Positions 8,076-20,500 of a stretch of 64,000 nucleotides of DNA are shown here, piece by piece (position 1 is the stretch's first letter; each line of letters opens with the position of its first letter). The translations under genes were made by a program, and so were the position numbers. Source of the DNA: Dimorphilus gyrociliatus (lineage: Eukaryota; Animalia; Annelida); assembly GCA_904063045.1 (NCBI GenBank), contig CAJFCJ010000006.1:2346946-2410945 (forward strand). The letters run 5' to 3'. The notes under the pieces were generated by a model. The model did not search any database and had not been told where the DNA came from. It saw only the letters and a list, made by a program, of their open reading frames with translations.

Positions 8076-8564
8076 TTATTTATCTTTTACTATTTTTTCA
8101 AAGCATGGCTGAAAAGTTCGATTGGAAACTATTTTGCGCCATCTAACGGTGAGCCCTAGTCCTGTAAGGAGGGCTAATTTTTTGTTCGATAGGAGAAGGT
8201 AGTATCAATAAATAAACTTACCCATTTCATCGATTCGATGCGACATCGCGAGAGTTATGCCCACCAAAAGAATACTAATGATAATAAGACCTCCCGCTAC
8301 TATCATAACAGCTCTGGCAATCTTTTTTTGTTTCATAGTTTGAACTTCATCCTCATCTCCGGCAACGGTTCCTGCCAATGCTCGAACTTCGTCCCCGGGA
8401 GATGTTTTAAAATAGGTATTCGAGTCAGCTGTGTATGATATTACTTCTATACCGTCATCGTTTGTAACCGAAGTATCTTGTATTGTATGAGGTGGATAGA
8501 TGCAGGAAGAAGAGGAATCGGTCAGTTCCATTCCAGCGTTGTATTCTTCGTCCACCGTCGACAT
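8076..8564 (-). CDS. Uncharacterised single-pass membrane protein (acidic N-terminus, C-terminal TM helix)
   Basis: ORF 8564-8222 has TM AVMIVAGGLIIISILLVGITLAMS and donor G|GTAAGT. A 60-bp intron to the acceptor at 8162 gives a last exon ending VKDK*. The last exon is uncertain. Confidence 0.55.
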
Positions 8565-10339
8565 GTGATTGCATTCTATCTATCCAAATCCATAATTTCT
8601 TTTAGTTTTTACACATAGAAATTGGATGGGATTTAGTTGCGAGTGTATTTTCTCTTAAATCGATCCTTGTCTATAATTTGCTTGTAATCCAATGTATTCT
8701 TTTGTCTACACCGTTCGTAATTTTGTTTACGACTGTCTATTATACTCACTCATTCACTCTTTCAATCTCTCTTTGTATCTCTCTCTCTCTCGCTCTCTCG
8801 TGGCGAATGTTGACGCCGCGTCGATACGCAGTTATCTTTATTCAGTAGTAGACGTCATCCATGCATATTCATTTGCGTTTGTTAGTAATGTTAGGTTTAT
8901 AAAGCGCCATCTTTCGTCGTCTTTAAATATTTTTTGATTGGGTATTTTAACGTCATAAAATATGACAAACACGTAAAAAAGACCTAACAAGCTATGGAAA
9001 GTAGCGTATTTCTATTCCAGATATAATTTAAGTAAAGTATGTAGAAGTTTTTACTTAACAATTATTCCTGATTGACCGTATTTTAGTTAATTAATAAGAG
9101 TTTAATAGATTGTTTAAAAATTTATATATACTTCGTATATTTTACTAAAATATAATGAAGGGAAATTTTTTAATTAATGCTTGACAGGAGAAATGGAATT
9201 ACTGAGTCACGTACTTTTGCAGCTTTATCAATAAGAATAAGCATTAGATTTTTCGTCAAATAGGCTACTTTTACTTATTATTTATATATTCAATTCTATT
9301 TTAACAACTAGAAAAACTAGACTAAGCTTCTTACAACCTAAGAAATTTTAACTCAATTAGAATAGGTATAAGCTGTCTATCTAGTCGCCTTTTTTCTCTG
9401 ACATTCATAAACATGACTTCAAGATCAATTAAAGAATAGAAGACGATTTGGGTTATATAGAGAGTAAAATGTTTCACTTCCTTCTATTCAAGTAATTCTA
9501 GACAATACCTTTTTCAATGATAATTCCCAATTAATTACTACGAAATTGGATAGTTTATCTTCAAGGACAAATTCATTATGGATCAATAATAATGGTAATT
9601 TCGTAATGATTTGGTATATACAGTATATACAAAATTTAAAGAATCTTGAAAAGGATAATGCTTATATACGTAATGCACAGAGAATAATCTCTCTCTCTCC
9701 TTTAGTATGATTATTTCAAATATATTAAAACTGCTCCTTTTTCCACAATCAATTAGATATTAATTTGAAATTCTGTCTCTTCTGTTTATCCAGTAAATAT
9801 GCCTATACAGCTATTTAATTCACTTTTATGAGATGTAAATAGTTAATATGTAAATTAAGATCGAAATAATTTCACTGTTTTTCCAAATGTACAGAAAATA
9901 CATTGATTCGGCTTAGCTTTCTAATATAATTTATCAAGGATTAAAAAAGTATCACTTTTGTTAATGCTTCGCTATTTAATGAATAATCTCTTCTTTAATG
10001 GAATACCATTGTAATTTTAAAAGACTTTTTTTTTATAAAGTGTAAAAAATCAATGATTACAATTAGATTTTATGAAATTTATAGAAACTTTACTTATTCA
10101 TTAAATATCTATTGAAAAATTATATGTATTTCTTTATATAGATGGATGTAAATATTATAAACAATTATAATTATGCAAATAGCAACACTTTCCCTTTCGT
10201 CAGCGAAACTTTTTCATTGTCAATATAGAGTGTTATATATTCGTCTCAAATATCAATATATGATAAAGGAATGTATTTTATCATGTTAAATGATGTAAAT
10301 ATTTTTGATTTATGTGTTTGTCTATCAATAAAACAAATA

Positions 10340-13300
10340 TTAATTTAATCCCAATTCGTCCAAATATCCTTCAGGTGCTTCAATCTGTAGAGTAACAAAT
10401 TACAAGTAAACAATTTAACACTTAGATAAATTAAATAGGCTACAAGAGATTTTGACTATTTTCCTATAAATTAAAATATATTCAAGTGTTCAAAAATTGC
10501 ATTTGCGATTATGAGAGTAGAAAGACAGAAAGGGATGAGAAAATTAAAAAGCGTATAAAAATTAAAAAGAGAAAATAAATAGCAGTGTTCCAGTAGTAAT
10601 GAATCCCCAACCTCACGTCCAAAACTAGCAAAAATTGAAAAAGCCCCGAGAAAATTGAAATAAACTCCCAAAAGAAGAAAAAAGAGAATAGATTTTTATT
10701 TCATCTTAGTAAGCTTGTGACACAAAAATAATATCTAAAATTATTTTGGTTAGATACTTGTGGATAGTGACAAGTAAAGAAAGAACAATACTAATAAGGG
10801 ATTTTCCAAGAAATTCTTGCAATAGTGTATTAACTCAATATAAGGTTAAATATATAAATATAGTCAGAGAGTTGAAGCATTATATTCATTATAAAAGCAG
10901 GCAATATTAGTTTAGAATAATTGACTGAAGATAGCTATAATTTTATTTTCTATATAAACTTCTGGAATTTGTCTGGTTGGTTTGGTATCTTATTAAATTA
11001 CAGCATCACAAACTCTTAGAGAGGTTTTCGATTAAAAATGACTAGCCTAGTCCAAGTTCTTCAAAAAATCCTTGAGGCATTTCATCCTGTATGAATTATA
11101 TATACAAATAATATTTTTATTATTTTTTTTCTTTTAAATAAAACTAAAAAGAAATCAAAATAAAAATAATTTTTTCTTTCTTTTTCTTTTTCAATTTACT
11201 TAAAAAAAAATAGAAAAAAAATAAAAAAAAGTACTTTATTCGGATTTATAAGAAAGAAAAGTGTGTCTATGACAGTTTTTTCTATTGTTACTACAGTTTT
11301 TCAGTAAAACTGAAAGAAATCTGTTCAGTTTAGAAAAGACAATTTGTATAGTTTTCTGATAAAGGAGAAGAGAAAATGAATTTTAAAATAATATTAGTTG
11401 CAAGTAATGTATTATTTAAAACATCTTTTCCTCTCCTCTTTGTTATGCTTATATTGTAAGGGAAAAAGAGGAAATATTTTTTACTTCTCTAACATAGAGA
11501 CCATGTGAGAGGGAAATAGTTTTTCTATATTTGTACTATGTATTTATATTTATAAAAAAATAATTATTTATAACTAAGTAAGAAAAACTCTATATTTAAT
11601 TAAGTAATTAAATATAAGGAAACTTATGTAGATTCTTTCTTGTAAGCATTGATGTTTTTTTTTAAAACGTGAAGACTGATTGAAAGATCAATAAGACACC
11701 TTGCAAAGAAATTAACCTAATCCATGATCTTCGAAAAATCCCTGGGGCGTTTCTTCCTGTACCAAAGCAGAAATTTGGCCTTAGTTTTTTTTTAAAGTTT
11801 TAGTCCTTTCATATTATGTTTGGGGATGTAATGTAGACAACAATAAGCCAAAAACTTCGTAAAAAATCTGTTCATGCTTCTAGCGAAACGTTAAAACATG
11901 ATGAAGGAATTAGTACTTCAACTGAAATTTTCGGATTGTTTACTTTTGTCATCAAAGAGAATAAACTCCAGTTAATAAAAAAAAGACAACAGAGGGACAG
12001 AACGATCACTTCAAATAAAGTGAGACTGACTTCTTTATAAGTCTCAAAATAGATTCAGGTGTGGTTGTTGAAATAAGTGTAAACTCTCTCTAACTCATCT
12101 TGTCAAACCGTTCGTTTTCAGTGCTTGATCGAGAACTTCATCCTTTTGAAAAATATTTCTAAGAAAGATTTCAAGGTCCACGCTCTTCATAAACTTTTCA
12201 GTATATATGCACGATCTACTTGCTTGTTACAGGCCAAGTGTAATTAGTAAAATTTTAATACCCTGTAACACTGTTGTTCGTGTCTCACTCTTTTAAATAT
12301 ATATATATATATACAATAACATATATATATGTCGTTTCAACATTACCAATGTGGTTTGAAATATTCTGTTCTTGAAGAAGTGAATACGATATTTTAGGAA
12401 AGATTTTCAAGAAAATGCAATGGTAAAGAAGCGTTTATAACTAGATTTTTATCAAGCATTACTTAATGTCATGCAGGGATTCGACCTACAAGATCTATTT
12501 AATACAAAAATCATAGAACACAACAGAATGAAATAGATGGATCATTCTAAAAATAGATTTAAAAAAAAAAAGCAAATAATAAATAAATTTCGTTACCTCT
12601 TGCAATAGATCTTGAGCGGCTATTGCCTTCAAAACGTTCTTCTTAGAAGTCTCTTGGATTTCTCCACCAAGAATAAGTTCGTCGAGCATAAAATAGGCTT
12701 TTTCAAAATTGAAAATTATATCCAATTCGCATACCTAATAATAAAATGTAAGTTATATACATTATTATTCATAACAAGGCTTTTGTAAAAATTTAATTAG
12801 AGAAGGAAAAAAAAGATATTATACAGTATATATATATATACATATATTAGTATATACTGTTTATATAATACGTCCAGTATAAAACTTAAAATGAAGCGCA
12901 GGTATATACAGTATACACATATATATATATAACTATTTATGCAATAACCAACAATACAGATAAAGCCATGCAATAAAAAAAAAAGAAGAAAAATAAGGTA
13001 TTTTATAGATAATTCAATAAAAAACATATTATTGTTTCCTTAATAATATTTTTAAAGCATAGAACTTGTTTGGTATTTTTCGTTCTATTGTTTTATTTTC
13101 TTTTCTTTGTTTATACATTTCTTTTTACTCAGTAAGATTAAGATTACAATAGGTATATCCTTTATAGATCTTGTTTCCTTTCCACTATATAAAAAAAAAT
13201 AAAGCAGCTTCAAAATAAAAAAAATTTAAACAGTATGAAAGATGAGAAATATTTCTCTTCTTTCATTTTTTTCTAAGCTACGTTTACAATTTAGTAACTA

Positions 13301-15083
13301 AATATATCTTTTTTTTTAAGCTTCCTCTCCTTTTCTCACATGTGTAGTTACAGTGCTAAAAGATTCACAATACTTTTATATTTACATATGTCATTCTCTC
13401 TTTCTTTCTTTCTTGCTTTCTTTCTTTTTTTTTTCTTTCTCTCCTCCTCTCCTAAGCCATTACAGATTCAATTCATTAACTTTTTCTCACACAAACTTCT
13501 GTTTGATTAAATCTATAAAGACTTACGGAAGAAAGCGAACTTTTAATTAATTGACAAGATATATGCTACAAAAGAGAAAAATAAAGCTGTAGTAATTACA
13601 GTAGCACGATATAGTTACATTCGGGATGTAAACATACTAAATAAAAATTTTTTAAAACGTTACATAATAAGGGAGATGCTGCATAATGATTATATAACAC
13701 TGGCTAAGATGCAAAATACAAAAAGAGTTTTTTACAAAGAAACTTTCAATTCGAAGGAGACCATTCGAATTAAACTACTCTGTATAGAAAAATGTACCGA
13801 ATATATATATATATATATATATGCATATATACCGATATATAATGCTATATTATATATTTGCATCTACACTATATATATATATATATATATAAAACATTAG
13901 GCTTTAGCCTACATCCACTCACACTTCCAAAATATTTATCAAGCAATTCCACATAACGATGTATGATCTCCAATGTTAGTAGTTCGTTATCATTGTTTTC
14001 CACACAGCAACAGAAGTATAAGCTAGCGTACCTGTTCGTATTTTTATATTAAAAACTTTTTAATTCTATAATTAATATATTTAACCTAGTTGTTTCATCC
14101 TTAATTTCTATAACTTAATTATCATCTTTTTTTATTGTGTAATTAAAAAAGGGAAAATACATAAATAAATGAAAAAGATTCATTGATAATCACAAAACAA
14201 TACAAGAAGATACGTGAACGCTGTTGTTGAAATAAATAAAGTGAAAATAGGAAAAGAAGTGAAGTAATAAATCACCCAATAGATGTAGCAAATTTTTGTG
14301 AAAAGTGTGTGTACAGTATACAATATACATTATATTATATACACATACATATTCATGTATATGTATATATAATATAATATATAGCTTTCTTAGAAAAATC
14401 TAGAAACTTACGTTTCCAAAATATTTATCTAACAGCTCAACGTAGCGGTGAATTAATTCAAGAGTCATTAATTCATTATCAGTGTGTTCAATACAACAAC
14501 AGAAGTATAAACTTGCATACCTGTTTTATTTTGTTTTGATTTGATTTAATTATTTTTGAATAAAAACAAAAAGAAAAAGTTTGTTCAAGTAAATAAAAAA
14601 TAAAAAACAAAATAAATTTTCTGCAATAATTCAATGAAAAAATTGATAAAATAGAAAAAGTTCTTTTTTTTAAAAACTACAAAAATCGTGCATTAATTCT
14701 TTTTTTTTTAAGTATAAATTAGTAAATGGAAAAAGTGTTTATTTATTTACTTTATTAATAATTACTGTACTATAAATATAAAAATTTTTACAGTATAAAA
14801 GGAGAAGGAGGGAGGGGGGGCTTAAGTAAACTTACCGTTTGTAAACGATTTTCATATCCTTCCATTCTATGAAACTGCACATTTTTGGTTTTCTAGATAG
14901 AACGGTTGTAATTAATTCTCTGGTTATTTTTTTCTTTGTTTTCTCTGGATGTGCTCCATACCATTTTTGTAACCGTAATTTGCCTTGCCGGCTAAATAAT
15001 AGCATAAACTGCATCTAAGAAAATAATGATAATTAATACGTTAAATGGCGGTCTCCTTTCTCATGTATCGTTAAACTTACCAT
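10340..15083 (-). CDS. AP1S: AP-1 complex sigma subunit; exons ATG(15083-15081), 15014-14835, 14520-14412 OR 14031-13923, 12734-12597, then one of several terminal exons (e.g. 11756-11712, 11086-11042, 10384-10340)
   Basis: [61 protein letters not shown] and [20 protein letters not shown] are AP-1 sigma motifs. Canonical splice sites on every listed exon. Confidence 0.95.
13800..13890. repeat. Two (TA)n microsatellites in the AP1S intron
   Basis: Visible TA runs at ~13800-13821 and ~13871-13890. Confidence 0.9.
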
Positions 15084-15989
15084 ATTTTAAGAGGATTCTG
15101 TAGCCTGAGATTTTGGTATTATGGTTGAAAAATTTTTTGAATACTTAAGTTGAATGTATATATACGAATTTATTTAATTTTATGTGTGTCAACTGACAGA
15201 TGGTTACATGCCGCAAGGGCTACAGGTTCCGCGCTACTTGAATTATTTATTATATTGTAAAGGAATGTATTCCATGCTGAATCACATGACAAAATAAGCC
15301 AATTTTTGTACATTTTTCAATCAATACACGGAAAATCAATTATGCTAACTACAAGCATATTTATTCCTAAACTGAGTATATTAATATATGCATCCAATAT
15401 AATATAGGCACGAAACTCATCAGCAATAAATGTTTTATGAAATGAGTTTGTGGCGCGAAAGTATCGCAGTGAAATATACTAAAAGTTGAAAGGTCAAATA
15501 AAAAAAAAGTTGAAGATTAATTTCCGGCGACTTCACGACTACGAAAATGCTGGGCTTTATTTTGCGAAAAAACGTGGTATTTTCAAGCATTAAATCAATA
15601 TGCGGTTGGAAAAATATCGCAAGACAATGCTCTACTAGGTAATAATGGACTATCGATAGTTATTGCCTCTTTTATCCTTTAAATATCATATATCTAACTA
15701 AACAGAGTACTGAACTTATTGTAGACCATTACGTGCTACATAATAGCTGAATTATTAATAATTTGAAATAGCATGTAAAAAAAAATACAAGCTTTTTAAT
15801 GATATGAACAAGTCTTCCTCAATATTATAAATTCTTAAAAAGTCAATTGTTTATATTAACAGAGACTTGTCTGCTCTCAAATTTTTTTTATACTTCTCTA
15901 CAACAAAATCAATTGTTGATTATATGTTTAAAATATGTAATATGCTTGCTTTCTGACAGCAATACTATAATTTTTTCCTTCTGTTTCGA

Positions 15990-17026
15990 ATGATTAGAAT
16001 TTTTAACGTTTATATCTTTGAAAATCCCTTATTAATGATAGTTAAACTAGCTGTTTGACTGTTCGTATAGTCATTTGTTTTAAAACCTGCTCTTTCTCTC
16101 CATGTCAGTTCCATCACATCCAATTATATCGAGGTACACAACATGCGATTGCATTATGAAAGAAAAGGTAATGGTAATGAGTTTATTATGTTGTTTCCCG
16201 GTGCTCTCGGATCAACTAGAACAGACTTCTTACCCCAGTTGGAAAAATTTAATGATAAAGACTTCACCCTGTTTGCTTGGGATCCTCCGGGTTACGGCAA
16301 ATCCCGACCACCACATAGACCTTGGCCAACGAAATTTTTTCAGAAAGATGCTGATACGGCAGTTGCTTTAATGAAAGCTTTAAATCCTGATAAAAAGTGG
16401 AATTTACTTGGTTGGTCGGATGGTGGTATAACAGGTTTAATTGTAGCAGGTAATCATCCGGAAATTGTTAGGAAGCTGGTAGTATGGGGATCTAATGCCT
16501 ACGTGACCGCTCAAGATATTATGGCCTATGAAAAAGTTAGAGATGTAAATGCATGGAGTGAAAAGATGCGAAAACCATATGAAGATGTATACGGAGAGGA
16601 TTACTTTCGAACAGAGTGGAGCAATTGGCAAGTGTTTTACATAGATAATTTTTAGGATTAAAAGTATTGCTATTACATAATTTTTGTTGTGTAAGAATAG
16701 GAATAGCTTATTTGAAATTTAATATTCATCAGTTAGATCTACCAGACATAAAACTTTCTGAAATCATATTCAGGTGTGACGCTATTAGCAGATATTTTAC
16801 GGAATTTAATGGTGATATTTGTAAAGATGCTATACATAAAATTGAATGTCCTACACTTGTTCTGCACGGAATGAAGGATCCTATGGTGCCTAATGAACAT
16901 CCGGAATATCTTAAAAAAGAGATTTCTGACTGCGAGACGCATTATTTTCCAGAGGGGAAGCACAACATTCACATGCGATATGCGGACGAATTTAATAAAG
17001 TTGTCAATAATTTTCTATTAAAATAG
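15990..17026 (+). CDS. BPHL: Valacyclovir hydrolase / biphenyl hydrolase-like serine hydrolase (introns 16008-16070 inferred; 16628-16773 GC-AG)
   Basis: FPGALGSTRTDF, AWDPPGYGKSRPP, nucleophile elbow GWSDGG, HGMKDPMVP and EGKHNIHMRYADEFN match BPHL. The first exon (MIRIFN) is inferred. Confidence 0.9.
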
Positions 17027-17525: not shown

Positions 17526-20500
17526 ATGGCTACTATGCCGAGTCCTTATCCACCATCAGGTGGACAACCCACGGATAATGCACCACCCCAAGCCCCAGAT
17601 AACCTAGAAAAAATGCAGAAAGCCATTCAGTCAATGGAGGAGAAAAACATGACCGACGATCCAAGGTATCATCAATTGGTAGCCTTAGCGAACAAGACAA
17701 AGTTGCAGCAGCAAAGTAAGAATGTTTAATCGAATACTAAACAAAGCAAAGTATTTACTTATATACCATTTAGCAGGAAAAAATAATCCGATCACTTGCA
17801 ACCAACTAGCCCAATTGAGGGCTCAGATAATGACCTATAAACTTATATCTCGCAATCAGTCAATCCCCGATAATATTCGCTTGGCTGCGGAAGGTCGATC
17901 TACATCATCAGTCGCATCACAGCCGACACCAACTCCTCCATCCATGCAATCTTTAACGTCCGGACAAAAACAGGTTAAATTAGCACCGGTTAAGAAGCCG
18001 GCTAGCCTAGATCCTCAAGAGATGCTGGTAGAGAGAGAAAATCGAATTCAAGCAAGAATAACTCATAGGATTAAAGAATTAGAAAATATGCCAACTGTAA
18101 TGGCAGACGATTTAAAAGTCAAAGCTATGATAGAGTTAAGGGCTCTTAGGCTCATCAACACTCAAAGACAATTACGTCAGGATGTTGTTTCATCAATGCG
18201 TAAAGATACAACATTAGAAACTGCTCTCGCTCCAAGAGCCTACAAAAGAGCTAAAAGACAAGGCTTGAGAGAGGCAAGAGTTACAGAGAGAATTGAAAGG
18301 CAGCAAAGACTCGAAGCTGAAAGAAGACGGCGACAGAAGCATCAAGAATATTTGAACGAGGTTATGTCGCACGCTAAAAATTTCAAAGATCATCATAGGA
18401 CTATGAGCGCTAAGATGGCCAAGATCAACAAAGCTATCTTAACTTACCATGCTAACACCGAGAGGGAAGCTAAACGAGAGCAAGAGCGTATAGAAAAAGA
18501 ACGTATCAGAAGACTTATGTTAGAAGATGAAGAAGGCTACAGAAAGTTGATTGATCAGAAAAAAGACAAACGCTTAGCATTCCTTTTGCAACAAACAGAT
18601 GAATATGTTGCCAACTTGACAAAATTGGTAGCTGCTCATAAAGTAGACGCCCAAAATAAGAAAAAAGAGATGAAGCGACAACGAAAAGAGGAACGAATGG
18701 CCAAAAATGTACTTAGAGCTGTGGGTGCCGACGGCGAAGAACGAGTGACCGTATTTGAACCTCAGTCGAATATAACTCTTAGCGGCGATGACGCACCAAG
18801 AGCACACGAACTTGATAAATGGTTGGATGAACATCCAGGTTGGCAAGTGAAGAAACAAGAAGATATTCCTGAAGACGAAGAACAAGAAAGTAGTGATGAA
18901 AGCGATGATGAAACAATTAATGATGCACGAGTTGACGTTATCGCTGAAAAGGCAGCAAAGGCTGATGATGATGACTATAGGAAAGGTGATTTGGAATCAT
19001 ATTACGGCTTAGCCCACTCTTGTACCGAAAAGATAACTGAGCAGGCTGATATGATGGTATATGGAAAATTGAAGCAATACCAATTGAAAGGCTTAGAATG
19101 GTTGGTATCGCTATATAATAACAATTTGAACGGTATTCTTGCCGACGAAATGGGTTTAGGAAAAACAATTCAGACTATCGGATTAATTACTTACTTGATG
19201 GAAAAGAAAAAGGTCAACGGACCGTACCTAATTATTGTACCTCTTTCAACTCTATCAAATTGGTTATTAGAGTTCGATAGATGGGCACCTACAGTTAAGA
19301 AGATGGCCTATAAAGGCTCCCCGAATGCAAGACGATCCTTGCAAACACAATTAAGACATACAAAATTTAATGTTTTATTGACAACTTACGAATATGTAAT
19401 GAAAGACAAAGCGGTTTTAGCCAAAATTAACTGGAAATACATGATCATTGACGAAGGACATCGTATGAAGAATCATCACAATAAGTTAACAGCAGTTTTA
19501 AATACCCACTATAACGCAGGGTATAGATTATTATTGACTGGAACCCCTCTCCAAAATAAATTACCTGAGTTGTGGTCTTTAATGAACTTTCTTTTACCAG
19601 CAATCTTTAAAAGCTGTACGACATTCGAACAATGGTTTAACGCTCCATTTGCAATGACAGGAGAAAAAGTAGAATTAAATCAGGAAGAATCTCTGTTGAT
19701 TATCAGAAGATTGCATAAGGTACTTAGACCATTCTTACTTCGTCGTCTTAAGAAAGAAGTAGAAAGTCAGCTGCCTGATAAGGTGGAATATGTTATCAAA
19801 GTTGATATGAGTGCCTTACAAAGAACAGTTTACAAGCATATGCAAAGAGGTGTAATGCTTACAGATGGTTCTGAAAAGGACAAAAAGGGCAAAGGTGGTA
19901 CCAGAGCTCTCATGAATACTCTTATGCAACTAAGGAAAATTTGCAATCATCCGTTCATGTTTAGAGACATCGAGAAGGCATTAGCTGAACACCAGGGAAT
20001 GGGCCATGATGGTAGTATTCATGGCAAAGATTTATTCAGGTCAGCTGGTAAATTTGAATTGTTGGACCGAATTTTGCCAAAAATGTATAAAACGAATCAT
20101 CGCGTTCTCCTGTTTTGTCAAATGACCACTTGTATCGATATTTTAGAGGATTTTTGTAGACTTAAAAGTTTGAAGTATCTTCGTTTGGATGGTACTACAA
20201 AATCTGAAGAAAGAGGAGAACTATTGGAACTTTTTAACAAGCCTAATTCAGATTATTTTATTTTCTTATTGTCGACAAGAGCCGGAGGTTTAGGTTTAAA
20301 TTTACAGGCAGCTGACACTGTTATTATTTTTGATTCCGATTGGAATCCTCACCAAGATTTACAAGCTCAAGATAGAGCTCATCGTATTGGTCAGAAGAAC
20401 GAAGTCCGTGTTTTACGTTTCTGCACTGTCAATTCCGTTGAAGAAAGGATTTTGGCTGCTGCAAGGTAATTTTTTTGTTTTATTAATAGCATAACAATGA

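What the first reader, a model, noticed from the sequence alone, without database searches (positions are those of the whole stretch)
10340..11756. Tandem array of three homologous 45-nt alternative last exons in AP-1 sigma
Seen: three phase-0 exons with identical coding length (45 nt including stop), each behind a CAG acceptor. They are [14 protein letters not shown] (11756-11712), [14 protein letters not shown] (11086-11042) and [14 protein letters not shown] (10384-10340), separated by AT-rich UTR-like sequence. Inference: with the internal exon pair this gives at least 2x3 protein isoforms, each last exon with its own 3' UTR. That would be a combinatorial exon-duplication system in a normally invariant ~157-aa adaptor subunit, and would explain why this gene has kb-scale introns in a genome of ~60-bp introns. 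I do not know of this being described, but cannot check.
Basis: partly seen in the sequence, partly recalled or inferred. Interest (0 to 1): 0.78.

Follow-up and report, generated by a model that had tools for sequence, protein, structure and literature searches.

The report
Alternative tail exons of AP-1 sigma
A vesicle-sorting adaptor gene (AP-1 sigma) of the tiny marine worm Dimorphilus gyrociliatus carries a row of related alternative last exons, but the same set of tails is already annotated in snails, oysters, insects and tardigrades, so it is an old layout rather than a new invention.

Summary
Three 45-nt, phase-0, stop-bearing exons sit behind CAG acceptors at the stated coordinates, downstream of exon 4 of a minus-strand AP-1 sigma gene.

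All three are homologous to AP-1 sigma tails of other animals:
- T1 is letter-for-letter the conserved "type I" tail of molluscs.
- T2 is a type-I-like copy. Against a paralogue's tail it differs mostly by synonymous changes.
- T3 is a divergent homologue.

One is a probable fourth homologous exon (12142-12095, "type III"). The other is the unrelated proximal tail (12546-12511) that the public gene model DgyrCDS4750 uses.

The novelty claim fails. Three homologous tail types are annotated as isoforms of single genes in molluscs and a tardigrade. They also occur in insects, ticks and an annelid, and vertebrate AP1S2 has alternative last exons.

The genome has three AP-1 sigma paralogues. A second one also carries the internal exon pair and two tails.

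I could reach no RNA of this worm, so use of T2, T3 and T0 is inferred from conservation only.

The scan has already reported many duplicated last exons in this genome, though not this gene's tails.

Verdict: real, a new member of a known kind, moderate interest.

The parts
15081..15083 (-). Exon 1 end: the start codon ATG, followed by gtaagt and a 66-nt intron
   Evidence: The public model P0341 begins MMQF, so it has one M before exon 2.
14836..15014 (-). Exon 2 (179 nt; residues 2-61)
   Evidence: Pfam PF01217 positions 2-60, E 1.8e-18. It is 100% identical to P0341.
14412..14520 (-). Exon 3A (109 nt; ends ...KYFGN)
   Evidence: PF01217 positions 62-97. The public model P0341 uses it. The C1 paralogue has an A-type counterpart.
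13923..14031 (-). Exon 3B (109 nt; ends ...KYFGS), the alternative to 3A
   Evidence: PF01217 positions 62-96. It is 83% identical to 3A and has a B-type counterpart in the C1 paralogue. It matches the form seen in most other animals.
12597..12734 (-). Exon 4 (138 nt; ends ...DLLQE with donor GAG|gtaacg)
   Evidence: PF01217 positions 98-140. It aligns to residues 98-143 of sigma-1A chain 1w63_Q, E 1.6e-18.
12511..12546 (-). Tp: proximal terminal exon, [11 protein letters not shown], behind a 50-nt intron with a long T-run and a TAG acceptor. It is not homologous to the other tails.
   Evidence: It is the tail of the public model DgyrCDS4750 = P0341. It scores negative against all tail profiles. 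Neither paralogue has a counterpart.
12095..12142 (-). T0: candidate type III terminal exon, [15 protein letters not shown], behind a weak AAG acceptor
   Evidence: tblastn with mollusc type III tails gives 8/14 identity. It scores 11.3 bits against the type III profile. As a six-frame fragment it scores 7.6 bits, a level reached 0.37 times per shuffled window, or about 0.002 for this intron. A stronger TAG acceptor 22 nt upstream would give KYFSKG* instead.
11712..11756 (-). T1: type I terminal exon, [14 protein letters not shown]
   Evidence: It is 14/14 identical to the tail of Octopus, Aplysia, Mizuhopecten, Ostrea, Sinanodonta and Gigantopelta isoforms. It scores 39.3-41.3 bits against the type I profile.
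11042..11086 (-). T2: type-I-like terminal exon, [14 protein letters not shown]
   Evidence: It scores 20.9-21.8 bits against type I and 13.3-14.0 against type II. Against the C1 paralogue's first tail, 8 codons are identical, 5 differ synonymously and 2 non-synonymously, while the flanks are unrelated.
10340..10384 (-). T3: divergent terminal exon, [14 protein letters not shown], in the position of the type II tail
   Evidence: It scores 11.5-12.7 bits against the all-tail profile but fits no single type. A score of 11.5 or more occurred in 1 of 60 shuffled windows. It has a CAG acceptor with a T-rich tract.

Best explanation
This is one of three AP-1 sigma (sigma-1 adaptin) genes of Dimorphilus gyrociliatus. 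The body of the protein (exons 1-4, residues 1-143) forms the conserved small-chain fold. The last 14 or so residues are encoded by whichever terminal exon the exon-4 donor at 12597 is spliced to. The array T0 (type III), T1 (type I), T2 (a lineage-specific copy of type I) and T3 (a divergent tail in the type II position) is the local version of a set of homologous alternative terminal exons. That set is shared by molluscs, annelids, arthropods and tardigrades. Each choice gives a sigma-1 isoform with the same core and a different short acidic C-terminal peptide ending in G-L-x. By analogy with mammalian sigma-1A/B/C, which differ in their C-terminal parts and bind different partners, the tails most likely tune which accessory proteins an AP-1 complex recruits. 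They would not change cargo-signal binding. Shown: the homology, the reading phase, the intact acceptors and stops, and selection on T1 and T2. Inferred: actual alternative use in this worm, a separate poly(A) site for each tail, and the function of the tails.
For: - Gene identity.
- Tails of other animals fall into three alignable types. Single genes are annotated with two or three of them: Gigantopelta X2/X4/X5, Ramazzottius RvY_13066-1/-2, and Sinanodonta, Ostrea, Saccostrea, Haliotis and Mizuhopecten.
- T1 is identical to the mollusc type I tail.
- T2 differs from the paralogue's tail mostly by synonymous changes.
- T1, T2 and T3 are the best three profile hits in the window and lie beyond the shuffled null.
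- The C1 paralogue has the same layout, with a 3A/3B pair and a type I-like tail followed by a type II tail. The layout therefore predates the gene duplication.
- The tail lies outside the Pfam model, which ends at position 140-142, and a sigma-3 chain of 142 residues has been crystallised.
Against: - No RNA evidence from this species could be reached.
- The only public model found, DgyrCDS4750, uses none of T0-T3. It uses a proximal non-homologous tail behind a very good 50-nt intron, so that tail could be the main product.
- T3 fits no tail type well.
- T0 has a weak AAG acceptor with a competing TAG upstream.
- The poly(A) hexamers after each tail are uninformative in DNA of 25% G+C.
Confidence: 0.72

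Rival explanations
1. Only one or two tails are used (T1 and/or the annotated proximal Tp). T2, T3 and T0 are leftover copies of duplicated exons that are no longer spliced.
For: The public model uses Tp only. T3 is divergent and unassignable. T0 has a poor acceptor. Open frames of 14 codons are not rare in this AT-rich DNA (my estimate is about 0.28 per frame).
Against: T2 and the paralogue's tail differ by 5 synonymous against 2 non-synonymous codon changes, with unalignable flanks. All three keep the exact length, the CAG acceptor and a stop at the homologous position. In a genome under strong compaction, about 2.2 kb of dead intron or UTR would be unexpected (inference; genome paper).
Confidence: 0.17
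2. The tails are alternative 3' splice sites within one long terminal transcription unit that ends after T3. They are not independent last exons with their own poly(A) sites and UTRs. Splicing to T1 would leave T2 and T3 in the 3' UTR.
For: No distinctive poly(A) signal separates the tails. AATAAA/ATTAAA occur at about the chance rate for this composition. The next gene starts only at about 8564.
Against: Nothing in the sequence excludes it. The protein outcome would be the same. The inter-tail spacers of 625-660 nt have the size of ordinary 3' UTRs, but that is weak evidence.
Confidence: 0.1
3. The resemblance of the three stretches is chance similarity in AT-rich non-coding DNA.
For: None beyond the short length of the exons.
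Against: Profile scores of 25.4, 22.4 and 11.5 bits compare with null maxima of 7.5 (reversed sequence) and 11.7 (60 shuffles). All lie on the right strand, downstream of exon 4, in phase, and behind AG.
Confidence: 0.01

Closest known systems
RefSeq-annotated AP-1 sigma ('AP-1 complex subunit sigma-2') isoforms of molluscs, e.g. Gigantopelta aegis X2-X6, Ostrea edulis X2/X3 and Mizuhopecten yessoensis X2/X4. Also Ramazzottius varieornatus RvY_13066-1/-2.
   Same: The body ends at ...LLQE in all of them, and the tail is then swapped among homologous peptides of 14-18 residues. The type I tail is identical to T1. Types II and III correspond to the paralogue tails and to T0.
   Different: Dimorphilus has an extra type-I-like copy (T2), a strongly diverged tail in the type II position (T3) and a non-homologous proximal tail. 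It also has three paralogous genes, two of them with an internal 3A/3B exon pair. I could not read the genomic order of the tail exons in the other species.
Vertebrate sigma-1 adaptins: the paralogues AP1S1, AP1S2 and AP1S3, and the alternative last exons of AP1S2
   Same: Diversity is concentrated in the C-terminal stretch after ...LLQE. The canonical vertebrate tail (EAETPRSVLEEIGLT) aligns with the invertebrate type II tail. AP1S2 has several alternative tails conserved across tetrapods. Its 3'-end isoform switching is noted in brain studies.
   Different: By eye, most vertebrate alternative tails (SQNEEWGGLSEDIL, PRHEYFNVPVY and others) do not look like copies of the canonical tail; I did not test this. 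Vertebrates rely more on gene duplicates.
Other duplicated alternative last exons reported by this scan in the same genome (CD63, DNAH2, RhoA, Rad6, cathepsin D, Gs-alpha)
   Same: Tandem homologous stop-bearing last exons behind a shared donor, often old and shared with molluscs (AI notes that I did not check).
   Different: They are in different genes. Here the array has three to four homologous members and occurs in two paralogues.

Membership tests
AP-1 sigma subunit (Clat_adaptor_s, PF01217; sigma-1 subfamily) | All body exons match the clathrin adaptor small-chain profile in collinear order | tested here: met
   Exons 2, 3A/3B and 4 match PF01217 positions 2-60, 62-97 and 98-140, with E 1e-13 to 2e-18.
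AP-1 sigma subunit (Clat_adaptor_s, PF01217; sigma-1 subfamily) | Closer to sigma-1 than to sigma-2, sigma-3 (AP-3) or sigma-4 | tested here: met
   Exon 4 gives AP-1 sigma-1A/sigma-3 chains at E 1.6e-18 to 2.6e-17. AP-2 sigma gives 7e-10, AP-3 sigma 3e-6 and AP-4 sigma 5e-6. The body exons are about 90% identical to mollusc AP-1 sigma.
AP-1 sigma subunit (Clat_adaptor_s, PF01217; sigma-1 subfamily) | A C-terminal extension of about 14 residues beyond the small-chain fold | tested here: met
   T1 is identical to the mollusc tail.
Protostome AP-1 sigma array of homologous alternative terminal exons (types I, II, III) | Tail switch point directly after ...LLQE, in phase 0 | tested here: met
   Exon 4 ends at LLQE on a whole codon. 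Isoforms of other species diverge at the same residue.
Protostome AP-1 sigma array of homologous alternative terminal exons (types I, II, III) | Type I tail present | tested here: met
   T1 is 14/14 identical and scores 41.3 bits. T2 is a second type-I-like copy at 21.8 bits.
Protostome AP-1 sigma array of homologous alternative terminal exons (types I, II, III) | Type II tail present | tested here: inconclusive
   T3 occupies the last position, as the type II tail does in the C1 paralogue, but scores only 4.6 bits against type II. The C1 and C11 paralogues have clear type II tails at 30.7 and 29.5 bits.
Protostome AP-1 sigma array of homologous alternative terminal exons (types I, II, III) | Type III tail present | tested here: inconclusive
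   T0 at 12142-12095 scores 11.3 bits against type III and lies between exon 4 and T1. It has only an AAG acceptor, with a competing TAG upstream.
Protostome AP-1 sigma array of homologous alternative terminal exons (types I, II, III) | The tails are actually spliced alternatively in mRNA | not testable with these tools
Alternative last exons in the strict sense (splice choice coupled to separate poly(A) sites) | A cleavage/polyadenylation site downstream of each terminal exon | tested here: inconclusive
   AATAAA/ATTAAA hexamers follow each tail, but they are expected by chance in DNA of 25% G+C.

The most novel reading that the evidence does not exclude
The three homologous sigma-1 tail types (I, II, III) would form a splicing module that predates the split of spiralians and ecdysozoans and does in invertebrates what sigma-1A/B/C paralogues do in vertebrates. 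I found no published description of it. Dimorphilus would have expanded it: four homologous tails plus one novel tail, times a 3A/3B internal switch, in two of three paralogues. There may also be coupling between the internal exon choice and the tail choice.
Probability: 0.3. Interest if true: 0.55.

Novelty: new member of a known kind. Interest (0 to 1): 0.33.

Why it matters
AP-1 decides which membrane proteins leave the trans-Golgi and endosomes. In mammals the three sigma-1 genes are not interchangeable, and loss of AP1S1 or AP1S2 causes disease. Many invertebrates make comparable variants from one gene by swapping a 14-residue tail, and those tails have stayed nearly unchanged across phyla. 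That singles out this short peptide as a functional handle on the complex that is worth testing. For this genome, the practical gain is a corrected gene model. The public model uses a proximal tail and misses the conserved ones.

Tried and rejected
- **Own-species RNA or protein evidence.**
  - A search with exon 4 alone (fragments of 25-80 aa) gave no 100% match. It returned only genomic read-through fragments of other organisms.
  - A search with a 168-codon open frame of the C1 paralogue, scored on exon 4 only, gave no own protein.
  - A search with the Paralvinella protein found one own model, DgyrCDS4750.
I therefore could not read orthologous loci, and the genomic order of tail exons in other species stays unknown.
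- **Joined spliced models.** I did not search with a joined spliced protein. All searches were exon by exon by reference.
- **RNA stems that might steer exon choice.** The inverted repeats in 10200-12750 are only A-run/T-run pairings, so I rejected this.
- **Direct-repeat search.** It does not recover the tails, because they are too short and diverged at the DNA level.
- **Literature.** I found no paper describing invertebrate sigma-1 tail exons. I found only mentions of AP1S2 isoform switching in vertebrates.
- **Large protein search.** I did not use the representative-protein search, because the family was not in doubt.
- **Human DNA.** The contig is not human.

Full report
**1. What is in the sequence**

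On the minus strand there is a complete AP-1 sigma gene:
- Exon 1 ends with the start codon at 15083-15081.
- Exon 2 is 15014-14836.
- Two copies of exon 3 follow: 3A at 14520-14412 and 3B at 14031-13923.
- Exon 4 is 12734-12597, with the donor GAG|gtaacg.

Every body exon matches the clathrin-adaptor small-chain profile PF01217 in collinear order. Exon 4 aligns to residues 98-143 of AP-1 sigma-1A at E 1.6e-18, far better than to AP-2, AP-3 or AP-4 sigma.

Each is 45 nt including the stop, each is in phase with exon 4, and each follows a CAG.

**2. Organism and context**

- The window is contig 6 of a 77.9-Mb assembly in 349 pieces.
- The public protein DgyrCDS4750 of that species (P0341) is 100% identical to exons 2, 3A and 4.
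- The genome paper reports about 350 scaffolds and a median intron of 66 bp.
- The contig is not human.
- Neighbours:
  - an alpha/beta-hydrolase gene and a Brahma-type SNF2 gene upstream on the plus strand;
  - a small open frame without a Pfam match starting at 8564 downstream.

**3. Is it more than chance?**

I built profiles only from the tails of other species. The combined profile scores T1 at 25.4 bits, T2 at 22.4 and T3 at 11.5. These are the three best hits in the whole window in six frames. The three other strong hits are the tails of the two paralogues.

| Null | Best score |
|---|---|
| Reversed sequence | 7.5 bits |
| 60 block-shuffled windows | 11.7 bits |

In the shuffles, a score of 11.5 or more occurred once and 22.4 or more never. 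For the 2.3 kb of one strand in question, that is about 3e-4 for T3, before counting the acceptor and the stop.

**4. What the tails are**

AP-1 sigma proteins of other animals share the body up to ...LLQE and then carry one of three alignable tail types.

| Type | Consensus | Seen in |
|---|---|---|
| I | [14 protein letters not shown] | molluscs, a tardigrade, copepods, Lepidoptera |
| II | ES[DE]EP[KR][SG][IL]LEE[ML]GF... | molluscs and flatworms; it aligns with the vertebrate and crinoid tail EAETPRSVLEEIGLT |
| III | DEA[IV]E.AL[KR]E.GL. | molluscs, the annelid Paralvinella, insects, ticks, tardigrades |

Single genes are annotated with several types:
- Gigantopelta aegis: X2 (II), X3/X4 (I), X5 (III).
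- Ramazzottius RvY_13066: -1 (III) and -2 (I).
- Sinanodonta, one locus tag: I and III.
- Ostrea and Saccostrea: I and III.
- Haliotis: II and III.
- Mizuhopecten: I and II.

Against these profiles the tails of the window and of the paralogues behave as follows:

| Tail | Result |
|---|---|
| T1 | type I, 14/14 identical, 41.3 bits |
| T2 | type I-like, 21.8 bits, with some type II character (14.0 bits) |
| T3 | homologous in general (12.7 bits) but assignable to no single type |
| C1 paralogue | one type I-like tail, then one type II tail |
| C11 paralogue | a type II tail only |

By position, T3 sits where type II sits in the C1 paralogue.

**5.

(a) *A candidate type III tail, T0.* At 12142-12095 the sequence encodes [15 protein letters not shown].
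- It shares 8 of 14 residues with mollusc type III tails.
- It scores 11.3 bits against the type III profile.
- It lies between exon 4 and T1.
- As a six-frame fragment it scores 7.6 bits. That level is reached 0.37 times per shuffled window, or about 0.002 for this intron.
- Its acceptor is a weak AAG. A stronger TAG 22 nt upstream would give a six-residue tail instead. T0 may therefore be a live weak exon or a relic.
- Some arthropod models (Tribolium, Gryllus, Limulus) appear, by my own reading, to continue into a peptide that is a type I exon read one base out of frame. In the Tribolium model that stretch directly follows a type III tail. This hints that type III lies upstream of type I there too.

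(b) *A proximal annotated tail, Tp.* The public model DgyrCDS4750 ends in [11 protein letters not shown]. This is encoded at 12546-12511, behind a 50-nt intron with a long T-run and a TAG acceptor.
- This tail is unrelated to the others.
- It has no counterpart in the paralogues.
- The annotation pipeline weighted transcript assemblies heavily, so Tp may be real.
- I cannot tell whether it is the major product.

**6. Selection and age**

The genome has three AP-1 sigma genes.
- The C1 gene also has an A-type and a B-type exon 3, each closest to its counterpart here, and two tails. The internal pair and the multi-tail layout therefore predate the C6/C1 duplication.
- T2 against the first C1 tail: 8 identical codons, 5 synonymous and 2 non-synonymous differences.
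- T1 against T2: 5 identical, 6 synonymous and 4 non-synonymous differences.
- In both comparisons the flanking DNA is unrelated. That is the pattern of coding sequence under purifying selection.
- The perfect identity of T1 with molluscs shows that it is translated.
- For T3 I have only homology and intactness.

**7. Introns**

| Gene | Intron lengths |
|---|---|
| This gene (C6) | 66, 315, 380 and 1188 nt; 50 to 2212 nt from exon 4 to the tails |
| C1 | about 75, 352, 397, 415 and 849 nt |
| C11 (single exon 3, single tail) | about 56, 171 and 474 nt |

**8. How it probably works**

The donor at 12597 is joined to one of several downstream acceptors, and each acceptor opens a short stop-bearing exon.
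- The tail lies outside the conserved fold. The Pfam model ends at position 140-142, and a 142-residue sigma-3 chain has been crystallised.
- All homologous tails are acidic and end in G-L-x.
- I infer that the tails select accessory partners of AP-1.
- Whether each tail has its own poly(A) site cannot be judged. The hexamers present are expected by chance at 25% G+C.

**9. Novelty**

The arrangement is annotated as RefSeq isoforms in many invertebrates. In vertebrates AP1S2 has alternative last exons that are mentioned in splicing studies. I found no paper devoted to the invertebrate tail types.

New for this species:
- the unannotated conserved tails;
- the extra type-I-like copy;
- the diverged T3;
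- the candidate T0;
- the same layout in a second paralogue.

This scan has already reported many duplicated last exons in the same genome, and it has noted the internal exon pair of this gene. It had not noted these tails.

**10. Limits**

- No RNA of this worm could be reached.
- The genomic order of tail exons in other species could not be read.

Noticed in passing
L004 (G000:C1:628000-637999), minus strand: exon 2 9519-9343, exon 3 copies 9264-9157 and 8803-8696, exon 4 8298-8161, tails 7745-7701 and 6851-6804: A second AP-1 sigma paralogue has its own A-type/B-type exon 3 pair and two terminal exons ([14 protein letters not shown] and ESDEPQSILEEIGLY*). No public protein with 100% identity to its exon 4 appeared in the search.
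   Followed up: partly
L005 (G000:C11:488000-497999), minus strand: exon 2 7779-7603, exon 3 7543-7436, exon 4 7264-7127, tail 6652-6605: A third, compact AP-1 sigma paralogue has a single exon 3, a single type II tail (EGEEPQSLLEELGFT*) and short introns.
   Followed up: partly
window 12511-12546 (-): The public model DgyrCDS4750 ends in a non-conserved proximal tail behind a 50-nt intron and omits the conserved tails. It could be a real extra isoform or an annotation artefact.
   Followed up: partly
proteins P0307, P0380, P0326 (Tribolium, Gryllus, Limulus models): By my own reading, these models contain a stretch like KHRKGFLKTMGLV, which looks like a type I tail exon read one base out of frame. 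They are probably mis-joined terminal exons in public annotations.
   Followed up: no
proteins P0225, P0227, P0331, P0362 and others: Many insect-like fragments end ...LLQE + VSYGD.P.EL. This looks like a conserved read-through into the intron after exon 4, and so possibly a further tail made without splicing.
   Followed up: no
window 15083-16143: The AP-1 sigma gene and a plus-strand alpha/beta-hydrolase gene (16143-17026) lie head to head, about 1 kb apart. A Brahma-type SNF2 gene (QLQ-HSA-BRK-SNF2) follows, with its largest open frame at 17722-20469 and a possible start near 17540.
   Followed up: partly
G000:C1, C19, C4 and other sites: The own-genome scan with PF01217 shows overlapping matches to the same profile positions in other small-chain genes.
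   Followed up: no
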